This document shows positions 17,431 to 43,938 of a stretch of DNA of 64,000 nucleotides, one piece after another; positions within the stretch are counted from its first letter, which is position 1, and every line of letters begins with the position of its first letter. The translations under genes were made by a program, and so were the position numbers. The notes under the pieces were generated by a model, which saw only the letters and a program-made list of their open reading frames with translations, did no database searches and had not been told where the DNA came from. This DNA is from Macrostomum lignano (lineage: Eukaryota): positions 62,001-126,000 of the forward strand of contig NIVC01000861.1 in the NCBI GenBank assembly GCA_002269645.1. The letters are read 5' to 3'.

Positions 17431-17479
<49 letters not shown>

Positions 17480-19890
17480 GAGATAGATAGATAGATAGAT
17501 AGATACAGTAGATAGATAGGTAGGTAGGTAAGATCGATAGATATATACATAAATACATACATACATACATACATACATACATACATACATACATACATAC
17601 ATACATACATACATACATACATACCTATAGACAAACATACATACATACATAAATACATACATACATACATACGTACATACATACATACAGACATACATAC
17701 AGACATACATACATACATACATACGTACATACATACATACAGACATACATACAGACATACATACATACAGACATACATAAATACATACATACATACATAC
17801 GTACATACATACATACATACAGACATACAGACATACATACATACATACATACATACATACAAAAATAGTACTACTAAGATCTCCTATCAGTTAAGCACCA
17901 ACAATATGCTCAAAGCTAGTTGTTGAAACTCAATCGCCGCCCAGATCTGGCAGTGCGGCGGCCGCATGGTGGACACGGGCTGCAGCCGGATCGGCCACGT
18001 GTACCGCAAATACGCCCCGTTCCCCAACCCGGGCGTTGGCGATTTCATCGGTCGCAACTATCGCCGCGTAGCCGAAGTGTGGATGGACGAATACGCCGAG
18101 TACATTTACAATCGCCGACCGCATTATAAATCCATACCGGCCGGTGATTTAACTTCTCAACGCGAAATTAGAGAACGATTGCACTGCAAACCGTTTAAAT
18201 GGTTTATGACTAACGTGGCCTTTGATCTGCCGCTCCGCTATCCGCCTGTTGAGCCGCCCAGCGCGGCCAGCGGTGAAATTCGTAGCGCGGCAGACGCCAG
18301 CCTGTGCATCGATACCAGATTCAAAGGCGGCATGCAGAGCTTCGGCTTGGCCAAGTGTATTAAAGGTTTGTGGCCTTATGTTATTATGCTATCCACCGGT
18401 CTCATTTAATTGTCTCCTACAGAGCATTTCTGTCTTGATGAAGCACTCCTGTGTCTTCTCAAAAACCAATCCCCTGTCTTCCACAAAGCACTCTGCTGTG
18501 CTGAGGGAGACCCTCAAAACCCTCCCAAATCGCTGTCAAAACACCCCTGTGCCTGACCACCAAAGCACTCCCCTGTCACCCTCAAAGCACTTCCCTGTCA
18601 CCCTCAAAGCACTTCTCTGTCACCCTCAAAACACACCCCTGTCACCCTCAAATCACCCCTGTCACCCTCAAATCACCCTGTCACCCTCAAAGCACCCCTG
18701 TCACCCTCAAAGCACCCCTGTCACCCTCAAAGCACCCCTGTCACCCTCAAAGCACTCCCCTGTCACCCTCAAAGCACCCCTGTCACCCTCAAAGCACTCC
18801 CCTGTCACCCTTAAAACGCTCCTGTCACCCTTAAAGCACTCCTATGTCACCCTCGAATCACTACTGTCTCTCAAATCACTCCCCTGTCTCTCAAATCACT
18901 CCCCTGTCTCTCAAATCACTCCCCTGTCTCTCAAATCACTCCCCTGTCTCTCAAATCACTCCCCTGTCTCTCAAATCACTCCCCTGTCTCTCAAATCACT
19001 CCCCTGTCTCTCAAATCACTCCCCTGTCTCAAAGCACTCCCCTGTCTGTTAAGCACTCCCCTGTCTCTCAAATCACTCCCCTGTCTCTCAAATCACTCCC
19101 CTGTCTCTCAAATCACTCCCCTGTCTCTCAAATCACTCCCCTGTCTCTCAAATCACTCCCCTGTCTCAAAGCACTCCCCTGTCTGTTAAGCACTCCCCTG
19201 TCTCTCAAATCACTCCCCTGTCTCTCAAATCACTCCCCTGTCTCTCAAATCACTCCCCTGTCTCTCAAATCACTCCCCTGTCTCTCAAATCACTCCCCTG
19301 TCTCAAAGCACTCCCCTGTCTGTTAAGCACTCCCCTGTCTCTGAAATCACTCCCCTGTCTCTGAAATCACTCCCCTGTCTCTCAAACCACTCCCCTGTCT
19401 TTTAAAGCACTCTCCTGTCTGTCAAAGCACTCCCCTGTCTCTCAAATCACTCCCCTGTCTCTCAAATCACTCCCCTGTCTCCCAAATCACTCCCCTGTCC
19501 GCCCCATTCCCAATAGCCTAGACCCTATCTAACCAAGCCAACCCTCACTCAACAGGCGGCGGCGGCCTATCTGGTGAGCAGAATTTCATATTCACATTCC
19601 GCAAAGACATTCACCCAGCCGATCGAGCCTTCTGTTTCGACGTGTCCCAGCACGCTGTGAAAGCTCCGGTGATTCTGTACCAGTGCCATTATCAGAAAGG
19701 CAACCAGCACTGGAAGATCAACCCCAATACTGGTCAGCTGTATCACGTTGCCTCTCGCTTGTGCTTGGATAGCGAGCCGGCCCGACTGGAGATATTCATG
19801 AATTCTTGCAATTCTGCCACGCAAACTCAGCTATGGAAATGGGGCACCACCGATCCGAAGCAGCTGGAAAGAGATTGGGCCAATAACTAG
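12703..19890 (+). CDS. GALNT10: Polypeptide N-acetylgalactosaminyltransferase, GALNT10-like, 604 aa; exons 12703-12936, 13925-14289, 15503-15962, 17945-18365, 19556-19890
   Basis: All junctions are GT-AG with matching phases (0,2,0,1) and total 1815 nt. N-terminal TM anchor; DWHDY..GPGEQG; SIIIPFHEE; VILVDDFS; FLDSHCE; [11 protein letters not shown]; [17 protein letters not shown]; C-terminal ricin-type lectin repeats (QHWK, QLWKW). Confidence 0.93.
12975..13886. repeat. 32-bp minisatellite (TATTGAATCTGTATCTTCCCACTTCCGGTCTG), GALNT intron 1
   Basis: 32-aa periodicity in the minus-strand ORFs equals three 32-nt units. Confidence 0.97.
14440..15477. repeat. 22-bp minisatellite (TTCGAAATGCTTAGATTAACTA), GALNT intron 2
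   Basis: Direct reading; ends about 25 nt before the acceptor. Confidence 0.97.
16047..16840. repeat. 23-bp minisatellite (GAATATCTGTAAACAGTAGCTGA), GALNT intron 3
   Basis: 23-aa periodicity in the minus-strand ORFs. Confidence 0.97.
17420..17860. repeat. Compound (ATAG)n(ATAC)n microsatellite, GALNT intron 3
   Basis: Direct reading. Confidence 0.97.
18575..19500. repeat. 20-21-bp minisatellite (ACTCCCCTGTCTCTCAAATC) with a related CACCCTCAAAG variant at the 5' end, GALNT intron 4
   Basis: Direct reading; gradual 5'-to-3' change of unit type. Confidence 0.95.
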
Positions 19891-28330: not shown

Positions 28331-29943
28331 TCACGACGCGCTGTGCAATTCAAATCCGGCGGCAGTGCTCAGCAGTCGATCCTCCGGTCGGTAGGAAATC
28401 GGCGCGTCGCCGAAGGAATTCCAGACGGCGCAATCGCCGGATTCGACGGCTAGAGACACGGAGGGCGAGGATTTCGGCGCCGGGCCGGCGCTAAGACCGA
28501 CAAACTGAGCATCGACTTTGGCGTCGGACAGTGCAACGCGAGAGAACCGGAAGTACAGCCTAGCGCAGCAGGTCATGTCGTCGCGCATGGAATCGCCTGC
28601 CGGAGCGGCGGCAGCGCCCGTCCTGACGAAGCTGACGGTGCCAACGAGGTTCACCGGTGTACCCGGGGACAGTTTTGCCATTCCGGCGGTCAAATTCCAG
28701 ACTAAAATCCGACCAGAAGGAGAAGCCTGCTGCTGCTGCTGCGTGAGCGAGGCTGTGCCTAAGCTGCAAGTCAATTTAGCATCCCGCGGCTGCGGAGCCC
28801 AAGCTGGCAGGTGCAAGTGCACCTCGCAATAGTCGCATTTGGCCGCGCCGCGACACAGAATGTCGGAAAATATTAACTGAAGCCTGACAGCAGCAGACTG
28901 GCGCATGTGCGATGGTTGCTGCTGCTGTTGTTGCTGCTGCTGCTGCAGTCTCACCTGGTAGAAACCTGTGACAAGCGGATGCAACGGCTGCGCCAGCCAG
29001 TAGGTGATCAAACGACTGCCAGCCTGGCGAGGCGGCTGCAGCCGGATCCGAGCCGACTGAGGCGTGGCGTCCCAGTAGGCGCAGCGGGGCGTCACCAGGA
29101 CTCCGTGCAACAGTTGACGCGGACTGTCTAGGCGAATTTCTAAACTGCAGTTCTCCTGCGATTGCGGGGTTTGAGAAGATTTTAGTTAGTATGCATGCAG
29201 TATGGCGACTGATACACTGCTGACAATGAACCCCACCCTCACCCTCGGTCCCTCACCCCCTCACTTTCACCGCTTCACCCTCACCCTCACCCTCACCCTC
29301 ATCCTCCCTCTCACCCTCACCCTCACCCTCACCCTAACCCTCATCCTCCCTCTCACCCTCACCCTCATCCTCACTGTCACTCACCCTCACCCTCACTCTC
29401 ACCCTCATCCTCACCCTCACCCTCATCTTCATCGTCACCTTAACTCTCACCCTCACTCTCACTCACTCTAACCCTCACTCTCACCCTCACTCACCCTCAC
29501 CCTCACTCTCACTCTCACCCTCACCGTCACTCTCACTCACCCTCACTCTTACCCTCACTCTCACTCACCCTAACTCTCACCCTCACTCTCACTAACCCTC
29601 ACCCTCACTCTCACCCTCACTCTCACCCTCACTCTCACTCACCCTCACCCTCACTCTCACCCTCACTCTCACTCACCCTCACTCTCACCCTTACTCTCGC
29701 TCTCACCCTTATCCTCACCCTCTCACCCTCACCTTCATCCTCTTTTCTCAATTCTCACCTTTAACAACGACGCGTCGCAGGTGAGACACCCGAAGCACAG
29801 GTAATTATCGCCCTGCCGCGAATGACAGGAATTCTCGTCCTGGCAAGAATAATAGACCCGCTCTGTCAACTGCAGGGCCACGGAGGAACCCTGCGTTGGA
29901 GATTGAGAAATAAACAGATTTTAAACTCAGCTCCCATAATACC

Positions 29944-30004
<61 letters not shown>

Positions 30005-30733
30005 TAAGTGGCCCATTACTCATGTAGTCGCGCATGGAATCGAGCCCAGGCACTCCAGCGGCACAAAACTAAGACGCAGTAGCCGCTGAGCTACTTTGAT
30101 CCCCGCTCCTATCCTGACCTTCTTCGACTTCTTTTCGGCGGGCGCTCCCACAGTCCAGACTGTGTGCGGCGACTCTGCCGCCTCTCTGCTGCCCGCCGCC
30201 GGCAGGCTTGGCACCTGGCCGAACAGGTGCCGATAGAGAGGCTGCTCCAGAGCCAGCGGGGTGCCGAAAGGACAGGCATAGGACAGGAACAACTGCAGCT
30301 CGGCCAGCCGCGGCTCCTCCGGGCCGAAATCCTTCGACAGAGGGCCGAGAAACTCGCCAACAGCTTCAAGCAAAGCGAACGCGTCCATCACGGCGTCTTC
30401 ATGATCCTCGTTGCCAAGGCACCATAGCAACGCGCCTGGCGGACTATGCTCGGTGACTAGCAACGGCCGTAGTACCCCGCCCGGCACGGGCACTGAGAAC
30501 ACTGGCTTTGTCGGAGACAATCGGCAGGAGTCTCGCTCGGGCACAAACGATTCTGTTGGATAGGCCAAGCCCAGCGCTCTGACAATGCAGGCTGTTAACT
30601 CTTTCTGATCCATGGCGGCCGGTAAACCGGCCAGGCTGGTCGACGTTGCCGAGAACCGGTGCAGTAGCACCGGCTGACCGGAAAAACTGCCGCCAGTGTC
30701 ACGCAGGCGGAACAGACCCAGGCACAGCACAGA
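28331..30733 (-). CDS. AP5M1: AP-5 complex subunit mu-1; exons 30733-30119, 29890-29759, 29155-28331; no ATG in the first exon
   Basis: Matches remembered AP5M1 blocks: FVPERDSC (DFVESRDSC), ACPFGT, LQLTERV (ISITEKV), LVTGFYQV (ILGFYQM), YCEVHL (FCEAHI), LVGTVSF (LSGTVTF), SGDCAVWNS (SSDYYIWNS). Both introns are phase 0 GT-AG. The track start at 30730 is GTG, 3 nt after an in-frame acceptor TTTCTTCAG. Confidence 0.88.
29225..29735. repeat. (CTCACC/CTCACT)n hexamer array, AP5M1 intron 2; reads (GGTGAG/AGTGAG)n on the sense strand
   Basis: Direct reading. Confidence 0.95.
29943..30003. repeat. (CTGT)n microsatellite, AP5M1 intron 1
   Basis: Direct reading, about 15 units. Confidence 0.95.
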
Positions 30734-30774
30734 CTGAAGAAATTAAGAAAATGTGTTAGTGATAGAAATAGAAA

Positions 30775-31168
30775 CCAGTTCAACCCCCTCACTCCCCTGA
30801 TAATAATTGGCCTGCCAGTTCAACCCCCTCACTCCCCTGATAATAATTGGCCTGCCAGTTCAACCCCCTCACTCCCCTGATAATAATTGGCCTGCCAGTT
30901 CAACCCCCTCACTCCCCTGATAATAATTGGCCTGCCAGTTCAACCCCCTCACTCCCCTGATAATAATTGGCCTGCCAGTTCAACCCCCTCACTCCCCTGA
31001 TAATAATTGGCTCGCTAGTTCAACCCCGTCACTCCCCTAATAATAATTGGCTCGCTAGTTCAACCCCCTCACTCCCCTGATAGTAATTGGCTCGCTAGTT
31101 CAACCCCATCACTCCCCTGATAATAATTGGCTCGCTAGTTCAACCCCGTCACTCCCCTGATAATAATT
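30775..31168. repeat. 40-bp minisatellite, about 10 units, between PIGG and AP5M1
   Basis: CCAGTTCAACCCCCTCACTCCCCTGATAATAATTGGCCTG, period 40. Confidence 0.97.
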
Positions 31169-31245
31169 GGCCTGCCAGTTCAATCCTCTCTACCCTTGTT
31201 TTTAGTTATTTTTTATAATTGAAAGTATAAATCGCAAAAAAACTG

Positions 31246-31251
31246 TTTATT
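31246..31251 (-). terminator. Putative polyadenylation signal AATAAA of PIGG
   Basis: TTTATT on + strand, about 175 nt past the PIGG stop. Confidence 0.5.
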
Positions 31252-31424
31252 ACTTAGAACAGTACTAATAGGTGTAATTTATATTAAGAAAAAAAGGAGA
31301 AGGGAAAAAAGTAAATGCAAATAAATTTAGCTGAGCTATAGTCATCTTTTTGTCAGTTTGCTAGGAGCACCAAAGTTTTTTTCAAAAAGAACAGAAACTG
31401 CCTACATGTAACTTGGATTTCAAA

Positions 31425-34400
31425 TCAATCGAAAAGCCGCGCAACAAGATACAGCACAGTTAGCAGAGCCAGGTAAGCGGAGCCATAGCAGTACTTGGGT
31501 GCGTACACTGTCCATACAAACAGATGATGCCGCTGTACAATGCAGAATAGCGCCAGGCTGCACCAGCTGTAACCTGCCAATAGGTGCGCCAGACCAATCA
31601 CAGATGATGCTCGTCTGAACTCTCCACCAGTACAGATGCTTTTATGCCCTTTTAGAAGCAGAATTGCAAGCAATAGATAAAACAATTGGCCAGTCCAAGT
31701 TGACAGGACGAGCAAAGCGCCGCTTAAAATCATCGAATTGAACGGCAGGCCAACGAATGATGCGCCAACATCGGCCGTTGCGAGACTGTTTGACTGGCCC
31801 TGGAATCGGATGCAATCGGCATTGGATGGCATGAAAATCTACCTACAGTAGCATCTATACAGAGCATATTTTATTTTTCGGTATGTTTCTGTAACAGATA
31901 GTGTACATGCTTGACGATTAGAAAGTCACAAACGGCCTCTGTACACCCTGTGTGAGCGTGTGTGTGAGTGCTGTGCCTGTCTGTTTACAGTATTGGCGCT
32001 TGCATTGTGCTCAGAAGTCTGCGGAATGGGCAGAATCTGACGACGATGTTTGAAAGATTTGAATATCTGAAGATCTTCAATCAAAATTGCACATCCCAAC
32101 TGAGGTTGTGAAATTAAGGGAATAATGCGAGAATACGAGTATGAAGTGCCTCTTTTAAACTTATTTTCTCCAGTTAATTCGATATAGTGCAATTTAGCGT
32201 TGTGAAATTTCGGAATTTTGAAATTTTATGTTTGCTAAAATTCGGATTTTTTATTTCGGGTTGTGAACTTTCGTCTTGAGGAAATTTCGGATATTTGAAA
32301 TTTTGGGTTTTTAAAGTTTTGGGATTGTAAAATTTTGGGATTGTAAAATTTCGGGATTGTGAAATTTCGGGATTGTGAAATTTCGGGATTGTAAAAATTT
32401 GGGATTGTGAAATTTGGGATTGAGAAATGTTGGGATTGTAAAATTTCGGGATTGTGAGATTTCGGGATTGTAAAATTTGTGGATTGTGAAATTTCGGAAT
32501 TGTGAGATTTCGGGATTGTGAAAGTGCCCCTTAGAAAGATGTGCCGGAGGGGGGCGGCCAAAACACAATTGATTTTTCAAGCATACAAACCAACAAGGAT
32601 AAAATAAAAAACTGCTGACTTACCAACTGAAAGTAAAGCGCCTGACCCAACCAAACAAAGGTGAGCATCAGAATGAGTCTGTCACGCCTCGCACTGCCAA
32701 GTCCTGGTTTAGCAAACGCTGGTCCAATGGCTACACAGTGCAGACAGAGGACTACACAATTTGCTGGGCAACTGGACAACACAGTCTGACAGAGTACAAT
32801 GCCACCAGCCAATGAGGCAACTGGACAGCCATAATTAGCATTAGTAATAGTCCCAATAACAGTCCATGCCAAAGCCAATAGTAATCCCAAACAGCTAATT
32901 ATAGGATTAATAAAATTTGTCAATACCAGACTACAACGAAACCAAATAGCGCAAAAACAGCAAGCAATTAAAATTAGGCATCGAATTATACTACTGTTTT
33001 CGACTATAATATAAGTAGCATCATTTGAAAATTTACTACTATCAAGGTATTTTTGCAGAAAAACACCAATTAAACAGATGCTACAGAGGAGAATTATTGC
33101 GTAACAGACAGGCCAACCGCGCAGGTGCTGATCTAGATCTGGTAGGTGGGCCCATTTGTCTCCGGTTTGATTGAAATTTCTAGCTAATCGAAATGCTACA
33201 AGAGGAATCAGCGGTTGAATCAGTTGACGAATACATTCCAGCCAAGGTAAATTAGCAGTGCTTAGACTGGCTGATAGGACGCGACAGGCAAACAGGCTGG
33301 TGCAAGCAAAGTACCAAAACTGATGCTCCTCCTCTATCAAACTAGTAGACGCGTGAATTAATATCGGAGCTAGACAGGTGCCCAGAATTAGCAGGTAGAT
33401 CGCCAGGTTGTTTAGCTGGAACAATTATGGGCAATTTATATGAAATTTGGCGCTTTGTGCTCGGTATGAAGTCGAAGCATAGTATGTGAAGGATGATTGG
33501 GTGCGTGCGGAGGATGGGGTGGCTGCGGAGGATGGGGTGGCTGCGGAGGATGGGGTGGCTGCGGAGGATGGGGTGGCTGTGGAGGATGGGGTGGCTGCGG
33601 AAGATGGGGTGGCTGCGGAAGATGGGGTGGCTGTGGAGGATGGGGTGGCTGTGGAGGATGGGGTGACTGTGGAGGATGGGGTGGCTGTGGAGGATAGGGT
33701 GGCTGTGGAGGATAGGGTGGCTGTGGAGGATAGGGTGGCTGCGGAGGATGGGGTGGCTGCGAAGGATGGGGTGGATGTGGAAGATGGGGTGGCTGCAGAG
33801 GATGGGTGGCTGTGGAGGATAAGGTGGCTGTGGAGGATGGGGTGGCTATAGAGGATGGGGTGGCTGTGGAGGATGGGGTGGGCGCGGAGGTTGGGGTGGG
33901 CGTACATTAAGAACAAACAATAAAAATAGCTAACCCTGTCCTCGGCTGATTTGAATTCATTTGGGCCGTTAGATTTTGCTGTCTTCATATCAACAGCTTG
34001 CAGCAAAGTTGGCAAACGAAAAAGACAGCAGAGGCAGCCCAGTCCTAAACCAATGAGCATTCTAGGCAAGCTGTACTCAGCCGATGCGTAAACCAAAGCC
34101 TGTTGAGCTTTTCTGGCCTCAGAGTAGCAATAGTTTAGATTTTCGGCGCAGCGCTTGGATCGTTCGGAGCGATTGAAGGCCTCTATTTTATAGTTTTTTT
34201 TAAATAAAGAAAATTGTGATTTCTTTACTATCAGTAGTGCAGTTAGCGAGTAGTAAAGTAATCAAACAAAAAACTCTCACCAGATTTAGAATTCAATTCG
34301 GCTTCTAATTCCAACAAATCGAGCCAGTTGTTGCTAAGCAACGAGTTGGAGAAGCCGCCGCAGGCGAGTCCGCCTAGAGACGGATGCAGCAGTCCCAAAC

Positions 34401-37400
34401 TGGCCCTGGGAGGCTGAACACCTGTCCAGCTAGTTAGCAAATTAGCCATATCTGTCTGCTCTAGTTCTGGGAGCTCAATCGATGGATCTAGACTGCTGGA
34501 AAGCTGTACACTGCTTAGCAACACGAGAGGAGTTCGCGTCTCGGCGGGGGAGGCGCCTCCGTGACCGCCAAGGTCGCTCATTCCGTGATCGCTGGTTACC
34601 GCTAGGAGCCAGTCGACTGGCTGAAGACAAAAGATGAAGAGTGTGCGTCACTTGATCTTAGCATCCATTGTGCGTCACTTGATCTTAGCATCCATTGTGC
34701 GTCACTTGATCTTAGCATCCGTTGTGCGTCACTTGATCTTAGCATCCGTTGTGCGTCACTTGATCTTAGCATCCATTGTGCGTCACTTGATCTTAGCATC
34801 CATTGTGCGTCACTTGATCTTAGCATCCATTGTGCGTCACTTGATCTTAGCATCCGTTGTGCGTCACTTGATCTTAGCATCCGTTGTGCGTCACTTGATC
34901 TTAGCATCCGTTGTGCGTCACTTGATCTTAGCATCCGTTGTGCGTCACTTGATCTTAGCATCCGTTGTGATCTTAGCATCCGTTGTGCGTCACTTGATCT
35001 TAGCATCCGTTGTGCGTCACTTGATCTTAGCATCCGTTGTGCGTCACTTGATCTTAGCATCCGTTGTGCGTCACTTGATCTTAGCATCCATTGTGCGTCA
35101 CTTGATCTTAGCATCCGTTATGAGTCACTTCCCAAGATCCCTATATTGACTTACTTCTCATTAATCCCATCTTGGCTCACTTCTTATTGATCCAATATTG
35201 ACTTACTTCTCATTAATCCCATATTGGCTCACTTCCCATTGATCCCATATTGAGTCACTTCCCATTGATCCCAAATTGAGTCACTTCTCATTTATCCCAT
35301 ATTGAGTCACTCAGAGATATTTCATATTGAGTCACTCAGATATCGCATAATGAGTCACTCAGATATCCCATTGAGTCACTAACCCCACATATCCCACAGC
35401 ACACAGCCGAGATCTACCTGGCTACTCAAAGCAGTGACAATAGACTCAACAACGGCATCCATTTCCGCAAGTTTATCCGGCACCAATCTACTATTCGGGC
35501 CTTCAATATGGCCGATGTGATCCAGTCCCAGGTAGTGCAGGATGAGCACATCCCAGTTTGATGAGGCGTCCAGAGCGACTCGCAAATTTTCAGTCACATT
35601 TTTGTCTACCTGCAAAATTTAATAGTGGGAAGTAATAATTTAGCATGGTTCAAAGTGTTAAGAGTCCGTGGGAGAGACAGGGTAAGAATTAGAAAAAACA
35701 TTTTTGGGCTCTATGGGTGACTCTATATGGGATCAATGGGAAGTGACTCAATATGGGGATCTGGGAAGTGACTCAATATGGGATCAATGGGAAGTGACTC
35801 AATATGGGGATCTGGGAAGTGACTCAATATGGGATCAATGGGAAGTGACTCAATATGGGGATCTGGGAAGTGACTCAATATGGGGATCCGGGAAGTGACT
35901 CAATATGGGGATCTGGGAAGTAACTCAATATGGGGATCTGGGAAGTGACTCAATATGGGGATCTGGGAAGTGACTCAATAAGGGGATCTGGGAAGTGACT
36001 CAATATGGGGATCTGGGAAGTGACTCAATATGGGGATCTGGGAAGTGACTCAATATGGGGATCTGGGAAGTGACTCAATATGGGGATCTGGAAAGTGACT
36101 CAATATGGGGATCTGGGAAGTGACTCAATATGGGGATCTGGGAAGTGACTCAATATGGGGATCTGGAAAGTGACTCAATATGGGGATCTGGGAAGTGACT
36201 CAATATGGGGATCTGGGAAGTGACTCAATATGGGGATCTGGAAAGTGACTCAATAAGGGGATCTGGGAAGTGACTCAATATGGGGATCTGGGAAGTGACT
36301 CAATATGGGGATCTGGGAAGTGACTCAATATGGGGATCTGGGAAGTGACTCAATATGGGGATCTGGGAAGTGACTCAATATGGGGATCTGGGAAGTGACT
36401 CAATAAGGGGATCTGGGAAGTGACTCAATATGGGGATCTGGGAAGTGACTCAATATGGGGATCTGGGAAGTGACTCAATATGGGGATCTGGAAAGAATGA
36501 TTAGTCAGCCAAAGCCAATTCCTTACCTCGTAGAAGTCGGTAGCAAAAAAGGATGGCAGTCCTTGCGCCTTGGCAAAGCTGCCGGGGAACATCCGGGTCC
36601 AGGTGTCGTCCCCATAGAACTGAACGCTGAAATTGGCTGAATTCCAACGACGCACAATGCTATCTGTGGCCAATTCGGAAGCGAAGAAATTCCACAAAAC
36701 GTCCAGGAATCCCGGAACTCGACCGGTTGTGAGGCACTGCGAAGTAGGCAAAGTGGATTGGTGAGAGGGAGAAGGCAAAAGGAGAAGGAAAGGGCAAGGG
36801 GTAAAAAAGAAAGGGAAGAGAAAGAGAAGAGAAAGATGGAAAAGAGAAAAAGGGAAGAGAAAGATGGGAAGGAGAAAGAGGGGAAGAGAAAGATGGGAAA
36901 GAGAAATATGGGGAAGAGAAAGACAGGAGAAAGCGAGGAAGGTGAATAGTGTAGGACAGAGATAAGAGATCTCAGCCTACCTTAATCCTAGGCAGAGTAA
37001 CAGTAGGCGACTGAACTTTCACCACAGCGCTATAACTGCCGCGAATGCCAGCAATTCTGCTTTTGCCTCTCCTGGCACTGTCCAGAAAGCGCATTTTAGC
37101 AGCAGATTGTCTATCAGATGAGAAAACCATGTCTTGTCGCATGCCATCAATCAATAGTATGACAGTTTTACGACCGAAGCATCGTCTGTCTAAATGCCAG
37201 TCAGAGGACAAATAATGATTATTTTGATTGCTCATTTGTACATCTGCGTCCGTTAATTAGTAGAACTGAGTTCACCATATGTGTCTGCAGAATCTCCAAC
37301 ATTGCTACTATAGAGTGGGGGTGCTACCCTCCCAAGGTCGAGTGCTACCCTCCCAAGGTCGAGTGCTACCCTCCCAAGGTCGAGTGCTACCCTCCCAAGG

Positions 37401-38253
37401 TCGAGTGCTACCCTCCCAAGGTCGAGTGCTACCCTCCCAAGGTCGAGTGCTACCCTCCCAAGGTCGAGTGCTACCCTCCCAAGGTCGAGTGCTACCCTCC
37501 CAAGGTCGAGTGCTACCCTCCCAAGGTCGAGTGCTACCCTCCCAAGGTCGAGTGCTACCCTCCCAAGGTCGAGTGCTACCCTCCCAAGGTCGAGTGCTAC
37601 CCTCCCAAGGTCGAGTGCTACCCTCCCAAGGTCGAGTGCTACCCTCCCAAGGTAGAGTGCTACCCTCCCAAGGTAGAGTGCTACCCTCTGCCAAGGTAGA
37701 GTGCTACCCTCGTCATAGGCAAGGTCGAGTGCTACCCCCTCCCAAGGTCGAGTGCTACCCTCCCAAGGTCGAGTGCTACCCTCCCAAGGTCGAGTGCTAC
37801 CCTCCCAAGGTCGAGTGCTACCCTCCCAAGGTCGAGTGCTACCCTCCCAAGGTCGAGTGCTACCCTCCCAAGGTCGAGTGCTACCCTCCCAAGGTCGAGT
37901 GCTACCCTCCCAAGGTCGAGTGCTACCCTCCCAAGGTCGAGTGCTACCCTCCCAAGGTCGAGTGCTACCCTCCCAAGGTCGAGTGCTACCCTCCCAAGGT
38001 CGAGTGCTACCCTCCCAAGGTCGAGTGCTACCCTCCCAAGGTCGAGTGCTACCCTCTGCCAAGGTCCTACATTAGAAGAGCTACTCGCTGACAAGGTTTA
38101 AAATATATTACCTCTTATGCTACTTTGTCCACCAACAAAGTAAGATGATTTTCCAACATCAAGAAAGAATCCAGTAGTGAAAATGCATGCAGCCAACAAT
38201 GTTGAAAAAGCAAAGAAAAAATCAAATATTGAGCTATTTAGAACAACCATCAT
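31425..38253 (-). CDS. PIGG: GPI ethanolamine phosphate transferase 2, 853 aa; exons 38253-38112, 37243-36981, 36736-36527, 35609-35418, 34620-34281, 34182-33935, 33415-32624, 31799-31425
   Basis: All junctions are GT-AG with consistent phases (1,0,0,0,1,0,0) and total 2562 nt. Motifs: FTTGFF, LIDGMRQD, PTVTLPRIK, TGRVPGFLDV, FYGDDTW, SFFATDFYEVDKNV, ILHYLGLDHIGH, SDHGMSDLGGHGG, QGQSNSLATAD, HHLFVWTVYAPKY. Confidence 0.92.
32290..32525. repeat. 16-bp repeat (CGGGATTGTGAAATTT), PIGG intron 7
   Basis: Direct reading. Confidence 0.9.
33505..33900. repeat. 18-bp minisatellite (GGAGGATGGGGTGGCTGC), PIGG intron 6
   Basis: 6-aa periodicity (EDGVAA). Confidence 0.95.
34640..35120. repeat. 27-bp minisatellite (TGTGCGTCACTTGATCTTAGCATCCRT), PIGG intron 4
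   Basis: 9-aa periodicity (VRHLILASV). Confidence 0.97.
35121..35390. repeat. Degenerate 25-26-bp array (GATCCCATATTGAGTCACTTCCCATT), reverse complement of the intron-3 array, PIGG intron 4
   Basis: Its reverse complement AATGGGAAGTGACTCAATATGGGATC occurs exactly in the 35712-36492 array. Confidence 0.9.
35712..36492. repeat. 25-bp minisatellite (TGGGGATCTGGGAAGTGACTCAATA), PIGG intron 3
   Basis: Direct reading, about 31 units. Confidence 0.97.
37320..38065. repeat. 21-bp minisatellite (GAGTGCTACCCTCCCAAGGTC), PIGG intron 1
   Basis: 7-aa periodicity; source of five artefactual ORFs. Confidence 0.97.
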
Positions 38254-38956
38254 TTCATAATCTGTAAACAATTGAATATATTATCAATTATTATAATATA
38301 TAATAATATAATAATAGGGGGGATAATAAATAATAATTTATGAAACAACTAATTAGGAACAAACTTAATATAAATAAAAAATTCTAAAACTTCTTTCTAT
38401 AGACAATAATCTCTAGGATATTCTTTGATATCTAATTTAGGGATAGGCCCAAAAATAATATATACCATTACCTTTTAGAAAGGAAAAATAATTTAGAATA
38501 CATTTATTGCCTAGTAAAGCAATGCTTTTTAAGGGTATGCTTAAGCCTAGGTAAAGCCTATAAAATTAAGTGAAAGATTACATTTTTATTAAATAAGAAA
38601 AGCTACAAATATTGAAAAGTTACAAATAGCAACTCTGTATTATAAAAGGGAACAGGGTTACCCCTTGATGCCTGCCTGTATTGACCATTAAGTGATAAGA
38701 TAACAAAAAAATTAAAAATATGAGTTTCTGCTCCATAAAATGTAGTTTCCATACTCATGGTCCCTCTAGCTCTATTCTATAGTAGCATACAATATATAAC
38801 AACAACAAAAAACTACAGCAACCCTGGGCAAGCCAATATACAATATACATGATACCTCTAAATAAAACTATTGCAGATTGGTTCTACACTAAAAACATAT
38901 CATTTACTCAAGTAGTACACTTTAAAAAGTAAAAAATAAGCTTTCAGATATGGATT

Positions 38957-39146
38957 CACAAGCGGATCCAGGATTTTTGAAGTAGTCGCGGTCGTCGCGC
39001 CGGTCGGCGTATTGGCCCAGCGGTTTGAATTGGCCCAAAAAAGCCCCCACATAAGCCCAAAATTACAATGTCAGCTTAAATGCAAGTCCAGCCACGGCAA
39101 AAGAGCTGGGACGGGACTAGGATGCCTCCCCTTGGATTTGTCACTG
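38957..39146. mobile_element. Degenerate hAT-type MITE, 190 bp
   Basis: 8-bp TSD TATGGATT (38949-56) / TATAGATT (39147-54). Decayed TIRs CACAAGCGGATCCAGG / CCTTGGATTTGTCACTG. Confidence 0.65.
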
Positions 39147-39697
39147 TATAGATTAACATAAGAAGAATTGTTAGAAAAACGTAAAATCGCAGTTAACTCA
39201 GCTTGAGCTCGTTTCTTAGATTATACGACTTTTAAATTTCCACTAAAGCTCTCTTCGTCTCGAGTCAAATGAAATCATTCCGTGAAGTTGTGTGTAACGT
39301 ACACGCAAAATGAGAAGTGCATTTGATGTCCATTTCATTATAGTTATAACTGTCTTAGTTAATTTCTTAGGTACCCATAGAACCCTAGAAAGAGAGATGT
39401 TCAGTTAGCTGAAGATAATCAGTATATTTATTGCTTTTTAATTCGTTGGAACATGCTGATGTTGCTTGTTGGAACTGCCTTATTTAAGCTTATCAATTAC
39501 TCATAAACGCAGGGACTACTTAAACTTAAACCACTTAATTTTAAGTGGTCCCTGCTTGTATACTTACATTTTTTAAATATTTTATATATGATCATTTCGA
39601 CCTACCTAAATCTTATACGAAGACGACGCGTTTTGTGTATTTACGCAATTTCTCACTCAGCCGTTCTTTTTAGTGGAGTTATAATTTTGTATCGTGA

Positions 39698-40054
39698 CAG
39701 CAGAAGCGTCTCCATAGATTTTGGTGGGGGGTCAAAGGCACAAATTCCACATGTACATGCAGTACATGACAAATTCCTATGTGTACATTAATTTCGTATT
39801 TTGAGAATCTGTGTTAGTCAACGCTCATTTTGGCGCCGCACAGGCACTCATTTTTAGCGACGCAGCTAGCACTCCGGTTTGCTCCGCAGGCACTCATTTT
39901 GATGTTGCAGGCCCTACGTATTGTCGACAGCCTGAAGCAAAATTATTGATTTCCATACCAGCCGGGTCACAATGTATATAGGGTCATTTTGTAATTGTCG
40001 TGGCAATGTCCCATAACTAGCTTTAAACTGGGCGGGGGGCATGCGACGCCCCTG
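39698..40054. mobile_element. Old hAT-type MITE, same family as 42748-43938, with only about 3 degenerate 21-bp units
   Basis: Shares ACATGTACATG..GAC.AAATTCCTA, GCACTCATTTT.GCGCCGCA, GCAAAATTAT.GATTTCCATA and the terminal GCGACGCCCCTG with the 42748 element. TSD only 6/8. Confidence 0.75.
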
Positions 40055-40199
40055 GATCGTCATAATGAGCTGAGTAATTAATCATGAAGTTACATGAAAA
40101 TACTAATCTCGCTCTTATGTATTGCACAGTAGTACACCAATATGCATGCATGTACATCGCGCGCGTAGTTCCAGCACAGTAAGCACCATTGCTTCATCG

Positions 40200-41050
40200 G
40201 CAGGTCACCGCAGGGTCCTTCTAGGCAGAGCCAGGTCCCCAAACTCAATCGCTTTGAGAACTATACGTCTGCTCTGCAACTCTAGCTGGGGTACCAGAAA
40301 GATTTTGCCCTTTTTCCTCGGGCTATATGCTGTCCTCGATCGTCGGATTGGACCGGCTGGAAATCGTTGCGGCGATCGTGTCGGCGGTCAACACGCAGAA
40401 GACTGTCATGCTCTGTGTGTCAGGCGACAAAGAGGCTGCTATATTTTCTGCCGAGGCGAGGACGGGCAGGTGAGGAAGGCGCTGAAGGGCACTGTCAGCA
40501 GTTTATCTACCTCGGCAGTCTATAATACCTGACAGTTCGCAAGGATCTGCGACGTCGCCGCGCGAACTTGCTTGCATGGGCTGCCTAGCCTTCCGTTCCG
40601 TGAGGGCTGTCCTGCAGTCCGAGGCAGCCTGCCTGACCGCCAGAGGGCCGCGCTGTTCCAGGCGGTGATCGAGACCGTCCTGTTGTACAACGCCGAGAAC
40701 TGGACGCTGACGATCGACGGACTCGCTCGAACCGCAGGTCGATGCGGCACACATACGCTGGCCTGCTGCACACCGCCTTCAAGATCGGCTACGAGCACGT
40801 CACCAATGCGGCACTCTAGCGCCGCACCGACCTGTCCCGTACCAGCAAACTGTTGCGACGTCGTCGACTCCCGCTATGCAGGCCATATCATCCGGTGGCT
40901 GCTACTAATGCTGCAGGCATCATACCGGCGAGGACAGTCGCGCACTCGGCGCTTCATCTATCCTGACCGATTGGCTGATGCTGGCGCCATCGGACACTAC
41001 TGCCGGCGGTGCGGCCTACACGTTCGCGCCCAAGCTGATCGAAAAGCGCC
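40200..41050 (+). mobile_element. Decayed non-LTR retrotransposon ORF2 3' fragment (RTE-like)
   Basis: RAALFQAVIETVLLYNAENWTLT, then in shifted frames AFKIGYEHVTNAAL.RRTDL...LLRRRRLRYAGHIIR. This matches the post-RT LLY..E.W ... L...GH region of RTE/L2-type LINEs. Multiple frameshifts and stops. Confidence 0.7.
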
Positions 41051-42747: not shown

Positions 42748-43938
42748 CAGGCGCGTCGCCATGGATTTTATGGTGCGGGGGACAAAGCCAACAATTATGC
42801 ATGTACATGTACATGACTAAATTCCTACATATACATTATTTTCAGAATCGGTGTTGTCAGCACTCATTTTAGCGCCACAAGCATTCATTTTAGCGCCACA
42901 GGCACTCATTTTAGCGCCACAGGCACTCATTTTAGCGCCGCAGGCACCCATTTTAGCGCCGCAGGCACTCATTTTAGCGCCGCAGGCACTCATTTTAGCG
43001 CCACAGGCACTCATTTTAGCGCCACAGGCACTCATTTTAGCGCCGCAGGCACTCATTTTAGCGCCACAGGCACTCATTTTAGCGCCACAGGCACTCATTT
43101 TAGCGCCGCAGGCACTCATTTTAGCGCCGCAGGCACTCATTTTAGCGCCGCAGGCACTCATTTTAGCGCCGCAGGCACTCATTTTAGCGCCGCAGGCACT
43201 CATTTTAGCGCCGCAGGCACTCATTTTAGCGCCGCAGGCACTCATTTTAGCGCCACAGGCACTCATTTTAGCGCCGCAGGCACTCATTTTAGCGCCACAG
43301 GCACTCATTTTAGCGCCACAGGCACTCATTTTAGCGCCGCAGGCACTCATTTTAGCGCCGCAGGCACTCATTTTAGCGCCGCAGGCACTCATTTTAGCGC
43401 CACAGGCACTCATTTTAGCGCCGCAGGCACTCATTTTAGCGCCGCAGGCACTCATTTTAGCGCCGCAGGCACTCATTTTAGCGCCGCAGGCACTCATTTT
43501 AGCGCCGCAGGCACTCATTTTAGCGCCGCAGGCACTCATTTTAGCGCCGCAGGCACTCATTTTAGCGCCGCAGGCACTCATTTTAGCGCCGCAGGCACTC
43601 ATTTTAGCGCCGCAGGCACTCATTTTAGCGCCGCAGGCACTCATTTTAGCGCCGCAGGCACTCATTTTAGCGCCGCAGGCACTCATTTTAGCGCCACAGG
43701 CACTCATTTTAGCGCCGCAGGCACTCATTTTAGCGCCGCAGGCACTCATTTTAGCGCCGCAGGCACTCATTTTAGCGCCACAGGCGCTATGTTTTGTCGC
43801 TCTGCAGCAAAATTATAGATTTCCATAACGGATTACAAGGTATGGGGTGGGGGGGGACAAAGCATTGGCATGTCCCCCCAGATCTTTTACTGGGGGGGGG
43901 ACATGTCCCCCCTGTCCCCCCCGTTGGCGACGCCCCTG
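42748..43938. mobile_element. hAT-type non-autonomous element carrying about 43 copies of a 21-bp unit (GGCACTCATTTTAGCGCCRCA)
   Basis: TIRs CAGGCGCGTCGCCA / TGGCGACGCCCCTG. Perfect 8-bp TSD ATCAGGGG (42740-47, 43939-46). Confidence 0.9.

What the first reader, a model, noticed from the sequence alone, without database searches (positions are those of the whole stretch)
30690..31430. PIGG-AP5M1 candidate operon in which AP5M1 has no start codon and would take its AUG from the spliced leader
Seen: the AP5M1 frame begins right after a strong acceptor (TTTCTTAATTTCTTCAG|TCT GTG CTG TGC, AG at 30735-34) in phase 0. There is no ATG at the 5' end of the exon, and I found no convincing ATG-bearing exon with a donor in the ~690 nt up to the PIGG stop. 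PIGG has AATAAA at 31251-46. About 360-400 of the ~490 nt to the acceptor is a 40-bp array, leaving an operon-like spacer of roughly 100 nt. Known: flatworm spliced leaders end in AUG, which can serve as the initiator. Inference: SL trans-splicing yields M-S-V-L-C-L-G-L-F, of similar N-terminal length to human AP5M1, making expression strictly dependent on trans-splicing.
Basis: partly seen in the sequence, partly recalled or inferred. Interest (0 to 1): 0.8.

Follow-up and report, generated by a model that had tools for sequence, protein, structure and literature searches.

The report
AP5M1 start codon supplied by spliced leader
In the flatworm Macrostomum lignano, the AP5M1 gene begins directly after a trans-splice acceptor with no ATG of its own, so its start codon most likely comes from the spliced leader; this mechanism has been known in flatworms since 2006, so the case is tidy but ordinary.

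Summary
The window is Macrostomum lignano scaffold NIVC01000861.1 (window coordinate + 62000). On the minus strand, PIGG ends at 31425 with AATAAA at 31251-31246. A 40-bp x 10.4 array fills 31190-30775. The AP5M1 frame opens at 30733, right after ttcttCAG, with an in-frame TAA four codons upstream.

The 691-nt spacer has only three ATGs. None has a phase-0 GT donor.

The deposited annotation (PAA75795.1, "partial", 523 aa) starts its CDS at exactly 30733 with Ser. The annotation pipeline sets 5' ends from SL-containing reads. The species' SL ends in ATG.

With that Met, the protein reads M-S-V-L, matching the M-[S/A]-[L/I/V] start of ten of 11 orthologues. Codon usage, a shuffle test (p about 0.02) and an AlphaFold model (beta1-beta2 of the mu longin domain) suggest the 40 codons before the first genomic ATG are coding.

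Caveats:
- I saw no reads.
- Met41 sits in a perfect Kozak context and HMM-detectable homology starts only there, so "strictly dependent" is unproven.
- The operon meets the published distance criterion, but co-transcription is not shown.

SL-AUG initiation is an established flatworm mechanism (Cheng et al. 2006). This is a new member of a known kind, of low to moderate interest.

The parts
31425..31799 (-). Last coding exon of PIGG (GPI ethanolamine phosphate transferase 2). The stop TGA is at 31427-31425; the 5' boundary is approximate (TTCCAG acceptor motif at 31805-31800).
   Evidence: Pfam PIGO_PIGG E=1.2e-15 on ORF 31425-31832. tblastn of PIGG orthologues, residues ~780-896 of ~910, maps to 31805-31464, collinear with upstream exons back to 37235. 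The top hits carrying a functional name are almost all called PIGG.
31246..31251 (-). AATAAA poly(A) signal of PIGG, 174 nt after the stop and followed by a T-run.
   Evidence: Read directly from the sequence. Function is inferred; no poly(A)-site data were available here.
30775..31190 (-). 40-bp tandem array, 10.4 copies, filling most of the intergenic spacer. On the transcribed strand the unit is GAGGGGGTTGAACTGGCAGGCCAATTATTATCAGGGGAGT.
   Evidence: TRF score 699, 95% matches. The array occurs only here in the window. It carries 7 GT[GA]AG donor-like motifs and 1 ATG on the transcribed strand. Predicted RNA structure is no better than shuffles, z=+0.87.
30734..30754 (-). Trans-splice acceptor: pyrimidine-rich tract plus CTTCAG, with AG at 30735-30734. 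The in-frame TAA at 30745-30743 lies inside this tract.
   Evidence: It matches the published M. lignano trans-acceptor motif [T/C]TNCAG. It is the only such match on this strand in the 691-nt spacer. The annotated CDS starts at the next base.
30614..30733 (-). First 40 genomic codons of AP5M1 (SVLCLGLFRLRDTGGSFSGQPVLLHRFSATSTSLAGLPAA). They contain no ATG and would be residues 2-41 after an SL-donated Met.
   Evidence: Codon-usage frame test: margin 8.4 nats for this frame, exceeded by 0 of 121 non-coding windows. Shuffle test against orthologue N-termini: z=2.3, 97 of 5000 shuffles as good. AlphaFold: residues 3-14 and 17-27 are beta strands, pLDDT about 70-81. The alignment puts orthologue Met1 immediately before S. 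Against: no significant HMM local match to this stretch.
30611..30613 (-). First genomic in-frame ATG (Met41 of the exon, Met42 of the SL-initiated protein), in the context gccgccATGg. It is the alternative initiation site.
   Evidence: Sequence. The HMM-detectable homology to orthologues starts at the next residue.
30119..30733 (-). AP5M1 exon 1 (205 codons, phase 0 at both ends, donor AAG|gtcagg).
   Evidence: Reconstruction is identical to PAA75795.1 / P0002. The junction is confirmed by UniRef A0A1I8J532 / P0001.
29759..29890 (-). AP5M1 exon 2 (acceptor ...aacgcag|GGT, donor AAG|gtgaga).
28331..29155 (-). AP5M1 exon 3 through the stop TGA (28333-28331). It encodes the mu-homology region and a poly-Q tract.
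   Evidence: The PDB 8yab_E alignment runs to query residue 505.

Best explanation
AP5M1 (AP-5 adaptor mu subunit) of Macrostomum lignano is a trans-spliced gene whose first exon starts at codon 2.

The pre-mRNA is cut at the CTTCAG acceptor (AG 30735-30734) and joined to the 35-nt spliced leader, whose last three bases are AUG. This creates ...UUGCAUG|UCU GUG CUG..., an ORF that begins M-S-V-L-C-L-G-L-F and runs through three exons to 28331 (524 aa). The SL AUG is the first AUG of the mature mRNA and is in frame. It restores the conserved M-S-[LIV] N-terminus and the first two beta strands of the mu longin-type domain.

The pre-mRNA most likely arises by read-through from PIGG. PIGG ends 691 nt upstream on the same strand, and only about 96 nt between its AATAAA and the acceptor is non-repeat. 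That is the operon geometry already described for this species.

What is shown:
- the sequence anatomy;
- identity with the deposited 5'-partial CDS;
- an SL ending in ATG;
- a coding-like signal in the first 40 codons, with weak homology and a supporting fold prediction.

What is inferred:
- that the annotated 5' boundary reflects SL-containing reads;
- that ribosomes start at the SL AUG rather than at Met41;
- that PIGG and AP5M1 share one primary transcript.
For: 1. Species and SL. The window is 100% identical over 22,403 bp to GCA_002269645.1 NIVC01000861.1. The M. lignano SL ends in ATG, followed by GTAAG in the SL RNA gene (PMC8629364).

2. Annotation. PAA75795.1, 'partial', 523 aa, begins SVLCLG and is identical to my three-exon reconstruction. 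Its CDS range is 30733-28331. Because a TAA lies four codons upstream, a 5'-partial ORF starting with Ser requires a transcript model whose 5' end is at 30733-30735, which is at the AG. The annotation pipeline (TBONE) cuts transcripts at peaks of SL-trimmed reads (PMC5730564).

3. Acceptor. CTTCAG matches the published trans-acceptor motif and is the only such match in the spacer.

4. No cis alternative in the spacer. There are three ATGs, all followed by early stops, and none has a phase-0 GT donor.

5. N-terminus. All 11 orthologues begin with Met. Ten begin M-[S/A]-[L/I/V/F/Q]-[R/L/Q]-[G/A]-[L/I/V]-W; the eleventh (MSVAIRHVW) carries two extra residues. The M. lignano S-V-L-C-L-G-L-F aligns from position 2. 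The RDSC motif offset gives an N-terminal length within about 5 residues of vertebrate AP5M1.

6. The 40 codons before Met41 behave as coding. The codon-usage margin is 8.4 nats, above the 95th percentile of held-out coding windows and above all 121 non-coding windows. The shuffle test gives p about 0.02. AlphaFold places residues 3-27 as the beta1-beta2 hairpin of a longin-type domain whose best PDB match is AP-5 mu, 8yab_E, E=2e-7.

7. Operon geometry. Same strand, 96 nt non-repeat between AATAAA and acceptor. The published mode is about 100 bp after repeat subtraction, with a 1-kb criterion.

8. Precedent. The SL 3' AUG is used as initiator Met in Schistosoma (Cheng et al. 2006, as summarised in PMC9851317). 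The Macrostomum SL ATG is described as a start codon in PMC10468722.
Against: - No SL-containing read, 5' RACE product or peptide was seen here. Trans-splicing at 30733 is deduced from the deposited CDS boundary plus the pipeline description.
- An HMM built from the orthologues aligns significantly only from residue 42 onward (just after Met41), and finds nothing in the first 45 residues alone.
- The shuffle test is only z=2.3, whereas orthologues score z=12-18 against each other.
- The SL AUG context (uugcAUGu) is weak by vertebrate rules, whereas Met41 sits in gccgccATGg. Leaky scanning to Met41 is plausible.
- The AlphaFold model rests on a 12-sequence alignment in which I supplied the N-terminal Met.
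- The codon test uses a small local training set (about 1,200 codons).
- For the operon: PIGG has no CDS in the NCBI record within 10 kb upstream, and its C-terminal exon has no match in the protein database. No shared transcription-unit name could be checked, and the seven GT[GA]AG motifs in the array are unusual for an outron.
Confidence: 0.75

Rival explanations
1. The mRNA is trans-spliced at 30733, but translation starts mainly or only at Met41 (30613-30611). The 40 upstream codons would then be an in-frame leader, and the SL AUG would be skipped by leaky scanning or would give only a minor long isoform.
For: Met41 lies in a textbook Kozak context, gccgccATGg, whereas the SL AUG has U at -3 and U at +4. 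HMM-detectable homology to orthologues begins at residue 42, and the first 45 residues give no HMM hit. A second reading frame is also open across this stretch (ORF 30595-30792), so openness alone is uninformative.
Against: A protein starting at Met41 would lack the region that in every orthologue holds M-S-L-R-G-V-W-V-I...V-L-F-S-R-x-Y-P-T-V-E. It would also lack the predicted beta1 and beta2 strands of the longin-type sheet. The 40 codons show a coding-frame codon-usage signal stronger than all 121 non-coding windows and weak but significant order-dependent similarity to orthologue N-termini. The SL AUG is the 5'-most AUG and is in frame. Flatworm SL AUGs have been shown to initiate (Cheng et al. 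2006).
Confidence: 0.17
2. AP5M1 is trans-spliced and uses the SL AUG, but it is not in an operon with PIGG. It would have its own promoter in or near the spacer, and the sequence upstream of 30734 would be a conventional outron.
For: Most trans-spliced M. lignano genes (about 60%) are not in operons (PMC8629364). The raw distance from the PIGG stop to the acceptor is 691 nt. No precursor spanning both genes was seen here. The NCBI record has no PIGG CDS with which to compare transcription-unit names.
Against: The genes are on the same strand, and only 96 nt between the PIGG AATAAA and the acceptor is non-repeat. This matches the roughly 100-bp mode of repeat-adjusted distances between trans-spliced operon genes, and lies well under the 1-kb criterion. 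The spacer is mostly a simple 40-bp array with no obvious promoter content.
Confidence: 0.35
3. A cis-spliced upstream exon, missed by the annotation, supplies the ATG. It could lie beyond the spacer, or use a non-GT donor or one of the GT[GA]AG motifs in the array.
For: The array carries seven donor-like GT[GA]AG motifs on the transcribed strand. Sequence alone cannot exclude exons further upstream, for example within PIGG.
Against: None of the three spacer ATGs can be joined in frame to the phase-0 acceptor. The transcript-based annotation ends the CDS at 30733 and flags it partial rather than extending it. The orthologue Met1 aligns exactly at the junction, so there is no room for extra N-terminal residues.
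Confidence: 0.04
4. This AP5M1 copy is a decaying duplicate in a polyploid genome that has lost its start codon, and the 'partial' CDS is an annotation artefact.
For: M. lignano is a hidden polyploid with many duplicated genes (PMC10468722). The protein is very divergent, at about 25% identity to orthologues, and gets no Pfam hit.
Against: The 523-codon ORF is intact across three exons with canonical GT-AG sites. The fold prediction and PDB matches are to AP-5 mu. Codon usage is coding-like. The ATG-less start coincides to the base with a consensus trans-acceptor.
Confidence: 0.03

Closest known systems
[quoted passage not shown]
   Same: The SL ends in AUG. The acceptor is in phase so that the AUG is in frame. 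There is no genomic ATG at the conserved N-terminus, and conserved N-terminal residues lie upstream of the first genomic ATG.
   Different: It was documented experimentally in Schistosoma mansoni (SL AUG in frame in 28% of trans-spliced transcripts; more than 40 cDNAs require it). Here the species is the free-living Macrostomum lignano, the gene is AP5M1, and initiation at the SL AUG is inferred, not measured. A Kozak-optimal Met41 offers an alternative start.
Macrostomum lignano operons as defined by Ustyantsev & Berezikov 2021 (PMC8629364)
   Same: Adjacent same-strand genes with a trans-spliced downstream gene. The intergenic distance is dominated by repeats, with about 100 nt left after subtracting them. 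Two-gene operons are the commonest class (75%).
   Different: Membership here rests on geometry alone. I could not see the authors' operon list, SL read track or poly(A) (T-fill) track for this locus.
Caenorhabditis elegans SL2-type operons with roughly 100-nt intercistronic regions
   Same: Poly(A) signal of the upstream gene, a short spacer, then the trans-splice acceptor of the downstream gene.
   Different: M. lignano has a single SL with no SL1/SL2 specialisation. Nematode SLs do not end in AUG and do not donate the start codon. The spacer here is inflated by a 416-nt tandem array.
AP5M1 / MUDENG, the mu subunit of adaptor protein complex 5 (PDB 8yab chain E)
   Same: An N-terminal longin-type domain followed by a mu-homology domain. 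Sequence match to 8yab_E over residues 114-505, and a fold match of the N-terminal domain.
   Different: Very divergent (about 25% identity, no Pfam hit), with a poly-Q insertion. The start codon is not encoded in the gene.

Membership tests
SL-AUG-initiated flatworm mRNA (Cheng et al. 2006 type) | The species' spliced leader ends in AUG immediately before its donor site | tested here: met
   The M. lignano SL is CGGTCTCTTACTGCGAAGACTCAATTTATTGCATG, followed by GTAAG in the SL RNA gene (PMC8629364). The species was identified by 100% identity to NIVC01000861.1. No SL RNA gene lies in the window itself.
SL-AUG-initiated flatworm mRNA (Cheng et al. 2006 type) | [quoted passage not shown] | tested here: met
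   CTTCAG| matches [T/C]TNCAG and is unique in the spacer. The PAA75795.1 CDS starts at 30733, the first base after the AG.
SL-AUG-initiated flatworm mRNA (Cheng et al. 2006 type) | SL-containing cDNA or reads are joined at that acceptor | not testable with these tools
   No RNA-seq data were reachable. Exact-protein look-ups in assemblies found only the genome scaffold, and the SL-initiated protein could not be queried. The feature is inferred from the TBONE pipeline description.
SL-AUG-initiated flatworm mRNA (Cheng et al. 2006 type) | The SL AUG is in frame with the main ORF, with no intervening stop | tested here: met
   The acceptor is in phase 0. ATG|TCT GTG CTG... stays open for 523 codons across three exons.
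SL-AUG-initiated flatworm mRNA (Cheng et al. 2006 type) | Conserved N-terminal coding sequence lies upstream of the first genomic in-frame ATG, so the SL AUG is required | tested here: met
   The first genomic ATG is codon 41. Orthologue Met1 aligns one position before the first genomic codon. Supporting tests are the codon-usage frame test, the shuffle test at p about 0.02 and the AF2 beta1-beta2 prediction. Weakness: there is no significant HMM local match in residues 1-45.
SL-AUG-initiated flatworm mRNA (Cheng et al. 2006 type) | Translation actually initiates at the SL AUG | not testable with these tools
   This needs Ribo-seq, N-terminal proteomics or reporters. Met41 in a gccgccATGg context remains an alternative.
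M. lignano operon (Ustyantsev & Berezikov 2021 criterion) | Immediately adjacent genes in the same orientation, with the downstream one SL trans-spliced | tested here: met
   PIGG exons run 37235 to 31425 and AP5M1 runs 30733 to 28331, both on the minus strand, with nothing recognisable between them. The trans-spliced status of AP5M1 is indirect (see the rows above).
M. lignano operon (Ustyantsev & Berezikov 2021 criterion) | Repeat-adjusted intergenic distance below 1 kb (mode about 100 bp) | tested here: met
   There are 512 nt from the end of AATAAA to the acceptor, 416 nt of it tandem array, leaving 96 nt.
M. lignano operon (Ustyantsev & Berezikov 2021 criterion) | Both genes are carried on one primary transcript (co-transcription), with no internal promoter | not testable with these tools
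   No RNA or RAMPAGE data were available. The NCBI record has no PIGG CDS with which to compare names.
AP5M1 (AP-5 mu subunit) | Best sequence and fold matches are to AP-5 mu, with an N-terminal longin-type domain plus a C-terminal mu-homology domain | tested here: met
   phmmer against the PDB gives a single hit, 8yab_E 'AP-5 complex subunit mu-1', E=1.1e-3 over residues 114-505. Foldseek of the N-terminal model gives 8yab_E at E=2e-7, followed by other AP mu/sigma and COPI longin domains. 21 homologues were found by HMMER. Pfam gives no hit.
PIGG (GPI ethanolamine phosphate transferase 2) | A phosphodiesterase-type catalytic domain plus the PIGO_PIGG membrane region, with closest named relatives being PIGG rather than PIGO or PIGN | tested here: met
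   Pfam PF01663 and PF19316 on the exon ORFs. There are 697 hits, and the best-scoring ones that carry a functional name are almost all named GPI ethanolamine phosphate transferase 2 / PIGG, including three M. lignano UniRef entries. The exons are collinear with orthologues.

The most novel reading that the evidence does not exclude
The 40-bp array between PIGG and AP5M1 may not be inert filler. It could be a functional intercistronic element. On the transcribed strand its units carry a 5'-splice-site-like GT[GA]AG in seven of about ten copies, flanked by G-tracts. These could recruit U1 or SL snRNPs to promote 3'-end formation of PIGG and SL addition at the single downstream acceptor, analogous to the Ur element of C. 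elegans operons. Combined with a weak-context SL AUG and a Kozak-optimal Met41, this could set the ratio of full-length to N-terminally truncated mu5.
Probability: 0.06. Interest if true: 0.6.

Novelty: new member of a known kind. Interest (0 to 1): 0.22.

Why it matters
For genome annotation, this is a clean worked example of why many M. lignano proteins are deposited as "partial". The CDS is complete once the SL's AUG is added. Pipelines that trim the whole SL, or that insist on a genomic ATG, will truncate such proteins. UniRef A0A1I8J532 starts this protein at an internal Met116 and carries a name that does not fit its AP-5 mu matches.

Biologically, production of full-length AP-5 mu in this flatworm would be hard-wired to trans-splicing, as already described for dozens of Schistosoma genes. 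The case adds an instance in a free-living, genetically tractable flatworm where the dependence could be tested by transgenesis. It does not reveal a new mechanism.

Tried and rejected
- Direct RNA evidence. Exact-protein look-ups for the UniRef fragment and for the unspliced exon-1 ORFs starting at GTG or at Met41 found nothing. The homology search with exon 1 returned only the M. lignano cluster, so no transcript-derived 'MSVLC...' protein exists in the databases.
- Gene-level literature. 'Mlig017254', 'AP5M1' and 'PIGG' are absent from the held supplements of PMC5816591 and PMC5730564. PMC8629364 has no held supplement. There is no full-text hit for Mlig017254. Cheng et al. 2006 itself is not held, so it is cited through papers that summarise it.
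- Shared transcription-unit name. I tried to show that PIGG and AP5M1 share a transcription-unit name. The PIGG C-terminal exon has no database match. The M. lignano PIGG entries are UniRef fragments without Mlig_3_7 names. The NCBI record shows no CDS in the 10 kb upstream of AP5M1. The meaning of the '.g3' suffix could not be resolved, because name prefixes come from 95% clustering.
- SL RNA gene in the window: none.
- Structured RNA element in the spacer: MFE z=+0.87 against shuffles, so no signal.
- Pfam on AP5M1: no family. Identity therefore rests on PDB, Foldseek and HMMER hits.
- HMM-based proof that residues 1-40 are homologous: failed. It was replaced by weaker global-alignment, codon-usage and fold evidence.
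- An open reading frame as evidence for coding: rejected, because a second frame is also open across the same 120 nt.

Full report
**What the window is.** A protein search with the translated exon returned a single cluster from Macrostomum lignano. Its members are UniRef A0A1I8J532 (203 aa) and NCBI PAA75795.1, 'hypothetical protein BOX15_Mlig017254g3, partial' (523 aa). Looking up PAA75795.1 returned scaffold NIVC01000861.1 of assembly GCA_002269645.1 (Mlig_3_7). The 22,403 bases fetched are identical to window 18331-40733. Record coordinate therefore equals window coordinate + 62000.

**Checking the observation.** All statements are on the minus strand.
- The sequence reads ...cattttcttaatttcttCAG|TCT GTG CTG TGC CTG GGT CTG TTC..., with AG at 30735-30734 and the exon starting at 30733.
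- The frame is closed four codons upstream by TAA at 30745-30743. The first in-frame ATG is 40 codons downstream, at 30613-30611.
- The PIGG ORF ends with TGA at 31427-31425, and AATAAA is at 31251-31246.
- Tandem Repeats Finder reports a 40-bp unit, 10.4 copies, 95% matches, at 30775-31190. The unit occurs nowhere else in the window.
- From the end of AATAAA to the acceptor is 512 nt, of which 96 nt is not array.
- The 691-nt spacer contains only three ATGs on this strand: 31407 (ATG TAG), 31345 (26 codons then stop, inside the PIGG 3' UTR) and 31109 (4 codons then stop, in a variant repeat unit). None has a GT in phase 0 that could be spliced in frame to the phase-0 acceptor.

**Gene identities.**
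- *AP5M1.* Exon 1 (30733-30119), exon 2 (29890-29759) and exon 3 (29155-28331) have canonical GT-AG boundaries. They give a 523-codon ORF that is letter-for-letter PAA75795.1. phmmer against the PDB finds one chain, 8yab_E 'AP-5 complex subunit mu-1' (E=1.1e-3, query 114-505). HMMER against 1.8 billion representatives finds 21 homologues of about 450-570 aa. Pfam finds nothing, so this is a divergent AP5M1.
- *PIGG.* The upstream ORFs carry Pfam PIGO_PIGG and Phosphodiest domains. A search with them returns 697 proteins, and the best-scoring hits that carry a functional name are almost all called GPI ethanolamine phosphate transferase 2 / PIGG. tblastn shows the exons are collinear with orthologues from 37235 down to 31464, reaching residue ~896 of ~910.

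**Is 30734 a trans-splice acceptor?** M. lignano has one 35-nt SL, CGGTCTCTTACTGCGAAGACTCAATTTATTGCATG. The enriched motif at its trans-acceptors is [T/C]TNCAG, sitting exactly at the junction (PMC8629364).
- CTTCAG at 30739-30734 fits this motif and is the only minus-strand match in the whole spacer.
- The deposited CDS starts at 30733 and is flagged partial. With a TAA four codons upstream, a 5'-open ORF that begins with this Ser can only be called on a transcript model whose 5' end lies at 30733-30735.
- The Mlig_3_7 annotation defined such ends by trimming the SL from reads, mapping them, and cutting transcription units at the resulting peaks (TBONE; PMC5730564).

I take this as strong indirect evidence for SL addition at 30733. 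I could not see the reads themselves.

**Is the SL AUG the start codon?** After trans-splicing the junction reads ...UUGCAUG|UCUGUG..., so the AUG is in frame and is the first AUG of the mRNA.

Evidence for:
- All 11 full-length orthologues begin with Met. Ten begin M-[S/A]-[L/I/V/F/Q]-[R/L/Q]-[G/A]-[L/I/V]-W-[V/I/L]; the eleventh (MSVAIRHVW) has two extra residues. Examples are MSVRGVWVI, MSLRGVWIY and MALRGVWLI. In the MAFFT alignment the genomic S-V-L-C-L-G-L-F aligns from position 2, so the family's Met1 falls exactly on the residue the SL would supply. I added that Met myself, so only the S/V match and the register are evidence.
- A global-alignment shuffle test of the 40 residues against the orthologue N-termini gives z=2.3 (97 of 5000 shuffles as good). 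The other two frames score far worse.
- In a codon-usage frame test trained on the rest of AP5M1 and the PIGG exons, the AP5M1 frame wins by 8.4 nats over these 120 nt. That is above the 95th percentile of held-out coding windows and above all 121 non-coding windows.
- AlphaFold2 on the 12-sequence alignment predicts residues 3-14 and 17-27 as a beta hairpin (block pLDDT 81, 75, 70) within a beta-beta-alpha-beta-beta-beta-alpha fold. Its best PDB match is AP-5 mu (8yab_E, E=2e-7, 205 aligned columns), followed by other adaptor mu/sigma longin domains. A protein starting at Met41 would lack both strands.

Evidence against:
- An HMM built from the orthologues gives a significant local alignment only from residue 42, directly after the internal Met. 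It finds nothing in the first 45 residues alone.
- The shuffle-test z of 2.3 compares with z=12-18 for orthologues against each other.
- Met41 lies in gccgccATGg, an ideal Kozak context, while the SL AUG context is poor. Some initiation at Met41, by leaky scanning or on non-trans-spliced RNA, cannot be excluded. 'Strictly dependent on trans-splicing' applies at most to the full-length protein.

**Operon.** The two genes are adjacent on the same strand. After subtracting the array, only about 96 nt separate the PIGG poly(A) signal from the acceptor. Ustyantsev & Berezikov found that repeats inflate intergenic distances in M. lignano operons. After subtraction the distribution peaks near 100 bp. 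They called pairs under 1 kb with a trans-spliced downstream gene operons (15% of genes; 75% of operons have two genes). This pair meets that definition.

Co-transcription itself is not shown:
- I could not retrieve a precursor transcript.
- PIGG has no CDS in the NCBI record near AP5M1, and its C-terminal exon matches nothing in the protein database.
- The only M. lignano PIGG entries are UniRef fragments from an older annotation.
- Seven GT[GA]AG donor-like motifs in the array are an oddity for a region that should lack donors.
- The spacer RNA shows no unusual folding.

**Comparison with what is known.** All reported flatworm SLs end in AUG, and this AUG can serve as initiator. In Schistosoma mansoni it is in frame in 28% of trans-spliced transcripts, and more than 40 cDNAs need it (Cheng et al. 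2006, summarised in PMC9851317, PMC12582326 and PMC5832876). [quoted passage not shown] The mechanism is therefore established, and the locus is already in GenBank as a 5'-partial CDS. What is new is only the explicit reading of this gene, AP5M1, as an SL-AUG-dependent ORF in M. lignano. No paper in the library mentions the gene.

**Verdict.**
- Observation: confirmed.
- Interpretation: supported for the SL-donated start (about 0.75). The operon is plausible by criterion (about 0.6). 'Strict dependence' is unproven.
- Novelty: new member of a known kind.
- Interest: low to moderate.

Noticed in passing
window 30610-30620 (minus strand): The first genomic in-frame ATG of AP5M1 (Met41) sits in a perfect Kozak consensus, gccgccATGg, exactly where HMM-detectable homology to orthologues begins. 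It is a possible second initiation site that would give a mu5 lacking the first two beta strands.
   Followed up: partly
window 29156-29758 (minus strand, AP5M1 intron 2): Intron 2 is almost entirely a hexamer array (TRF: ACCCTC x 87 on the + strand). On the transcribed strand it reads GGTGAG/GGGTGA repeats and contains 64 copies of the species' donor motif GT[GA]AG directly downstream of the real donor AAG|GTGAGA. It is not clear how the spliceosome picks the first one.
   Followed up: partly
window 30775-31190 (minus strand): The units of the 40-bp intergenic array carry a donor-like GTGAG (7 of about 10 copies; the variants are GTGAC and GTGAT) between G4-G5 tracts. The array has only one ATG, in a variant unit. 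It is unusual content for an outron or intercistronic region, and it shows no stable predicted RNA fold.
   Followed up: partly
window 37235-38280 (minus strand): All three M. lignano PIGG UniRef models start at MSNQNN (37235) and lack the N-terminal transmembrane segment that orthologues have. A candidate upstream exon encoding MMVVLNSSIFDFFFAFSTLLAACIFTTGFFL lies within 38280-38101. It is separated from 37235 by a tandem-repeat-filled stretch of about 0.85 kb (37253-38100), so the PIGG 5' end is probably mis-annotated. An acceptor, cggacgcag|ATGTAC, sits just upstream of 37235.
   Followed up: partly
window 30734-40733 (= L001 1-10000): The NCBI record lists no CDS for PIGG, although the exons are collinear and open against orthologues. 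The PIGG C-terminal exon (31428-31832) has no match at all among 5.8 billion proteins. PIGG at this locus appears to have been dropped from the deposited annotation.
   Followed up: partly
P0001 / UniRef A0A1I8J532 (window ~30388-28950): This UniRef entry is named 'Type I inositol 3,4-bisphosphate 4-phosphatase' but is a fragment of AP5M1. It starts at internal Met116 and ends at FYQVR, just before the poly-Q tract. The name looks like an annotation error.
   Followed up: yes
window 28915-28960 (minus strand, AP5M1 exon 3): A poly-Q run (LQQQQQQQQQQ) is inserted in the mu-homology region. It is immediately preceded by CAG|GTGAGA, a consensus donor inside the exon, so an alternative splice or the truncated UniRef model may originate here.
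   Followed up: no
window 29943-30004, 32200-32523, 33491-33899, 34602-35149, 35704-35898, 37253-38100, 16019-16830: The window is dense with tandem arrays: (CTGT)n in AP5M1 intron 1; 16/32/48-bp and 18-bp arrays inside PIGG; long arrays giving open frames on both strands; and a 23-bp array repeating TTACAG 36 times at 16019-16830. Several create long spurious ORFs.
   Followed up: no
window ~15399-19890 (+ strand): A polypeptide GalNAc-transferase-like gene (Glycos_transf_2, Glyco_transf_7C, Ricin_B_lectin; 604-aa product in the NCBI record) lies convergent to AP5M1. About 8.4 kb separate their 3' ends.
   Followed up: no
window 42817-43770 (minus strand): A 317-aa ORF matches Pfam DUF6944 (E=7e-18), with a weak match to male-specific sperm protein. 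It lies upstream of PIGG on the same strand, and its relation to the PIGG/AP5M1 transcription unit is unknown.
   Followed up: no
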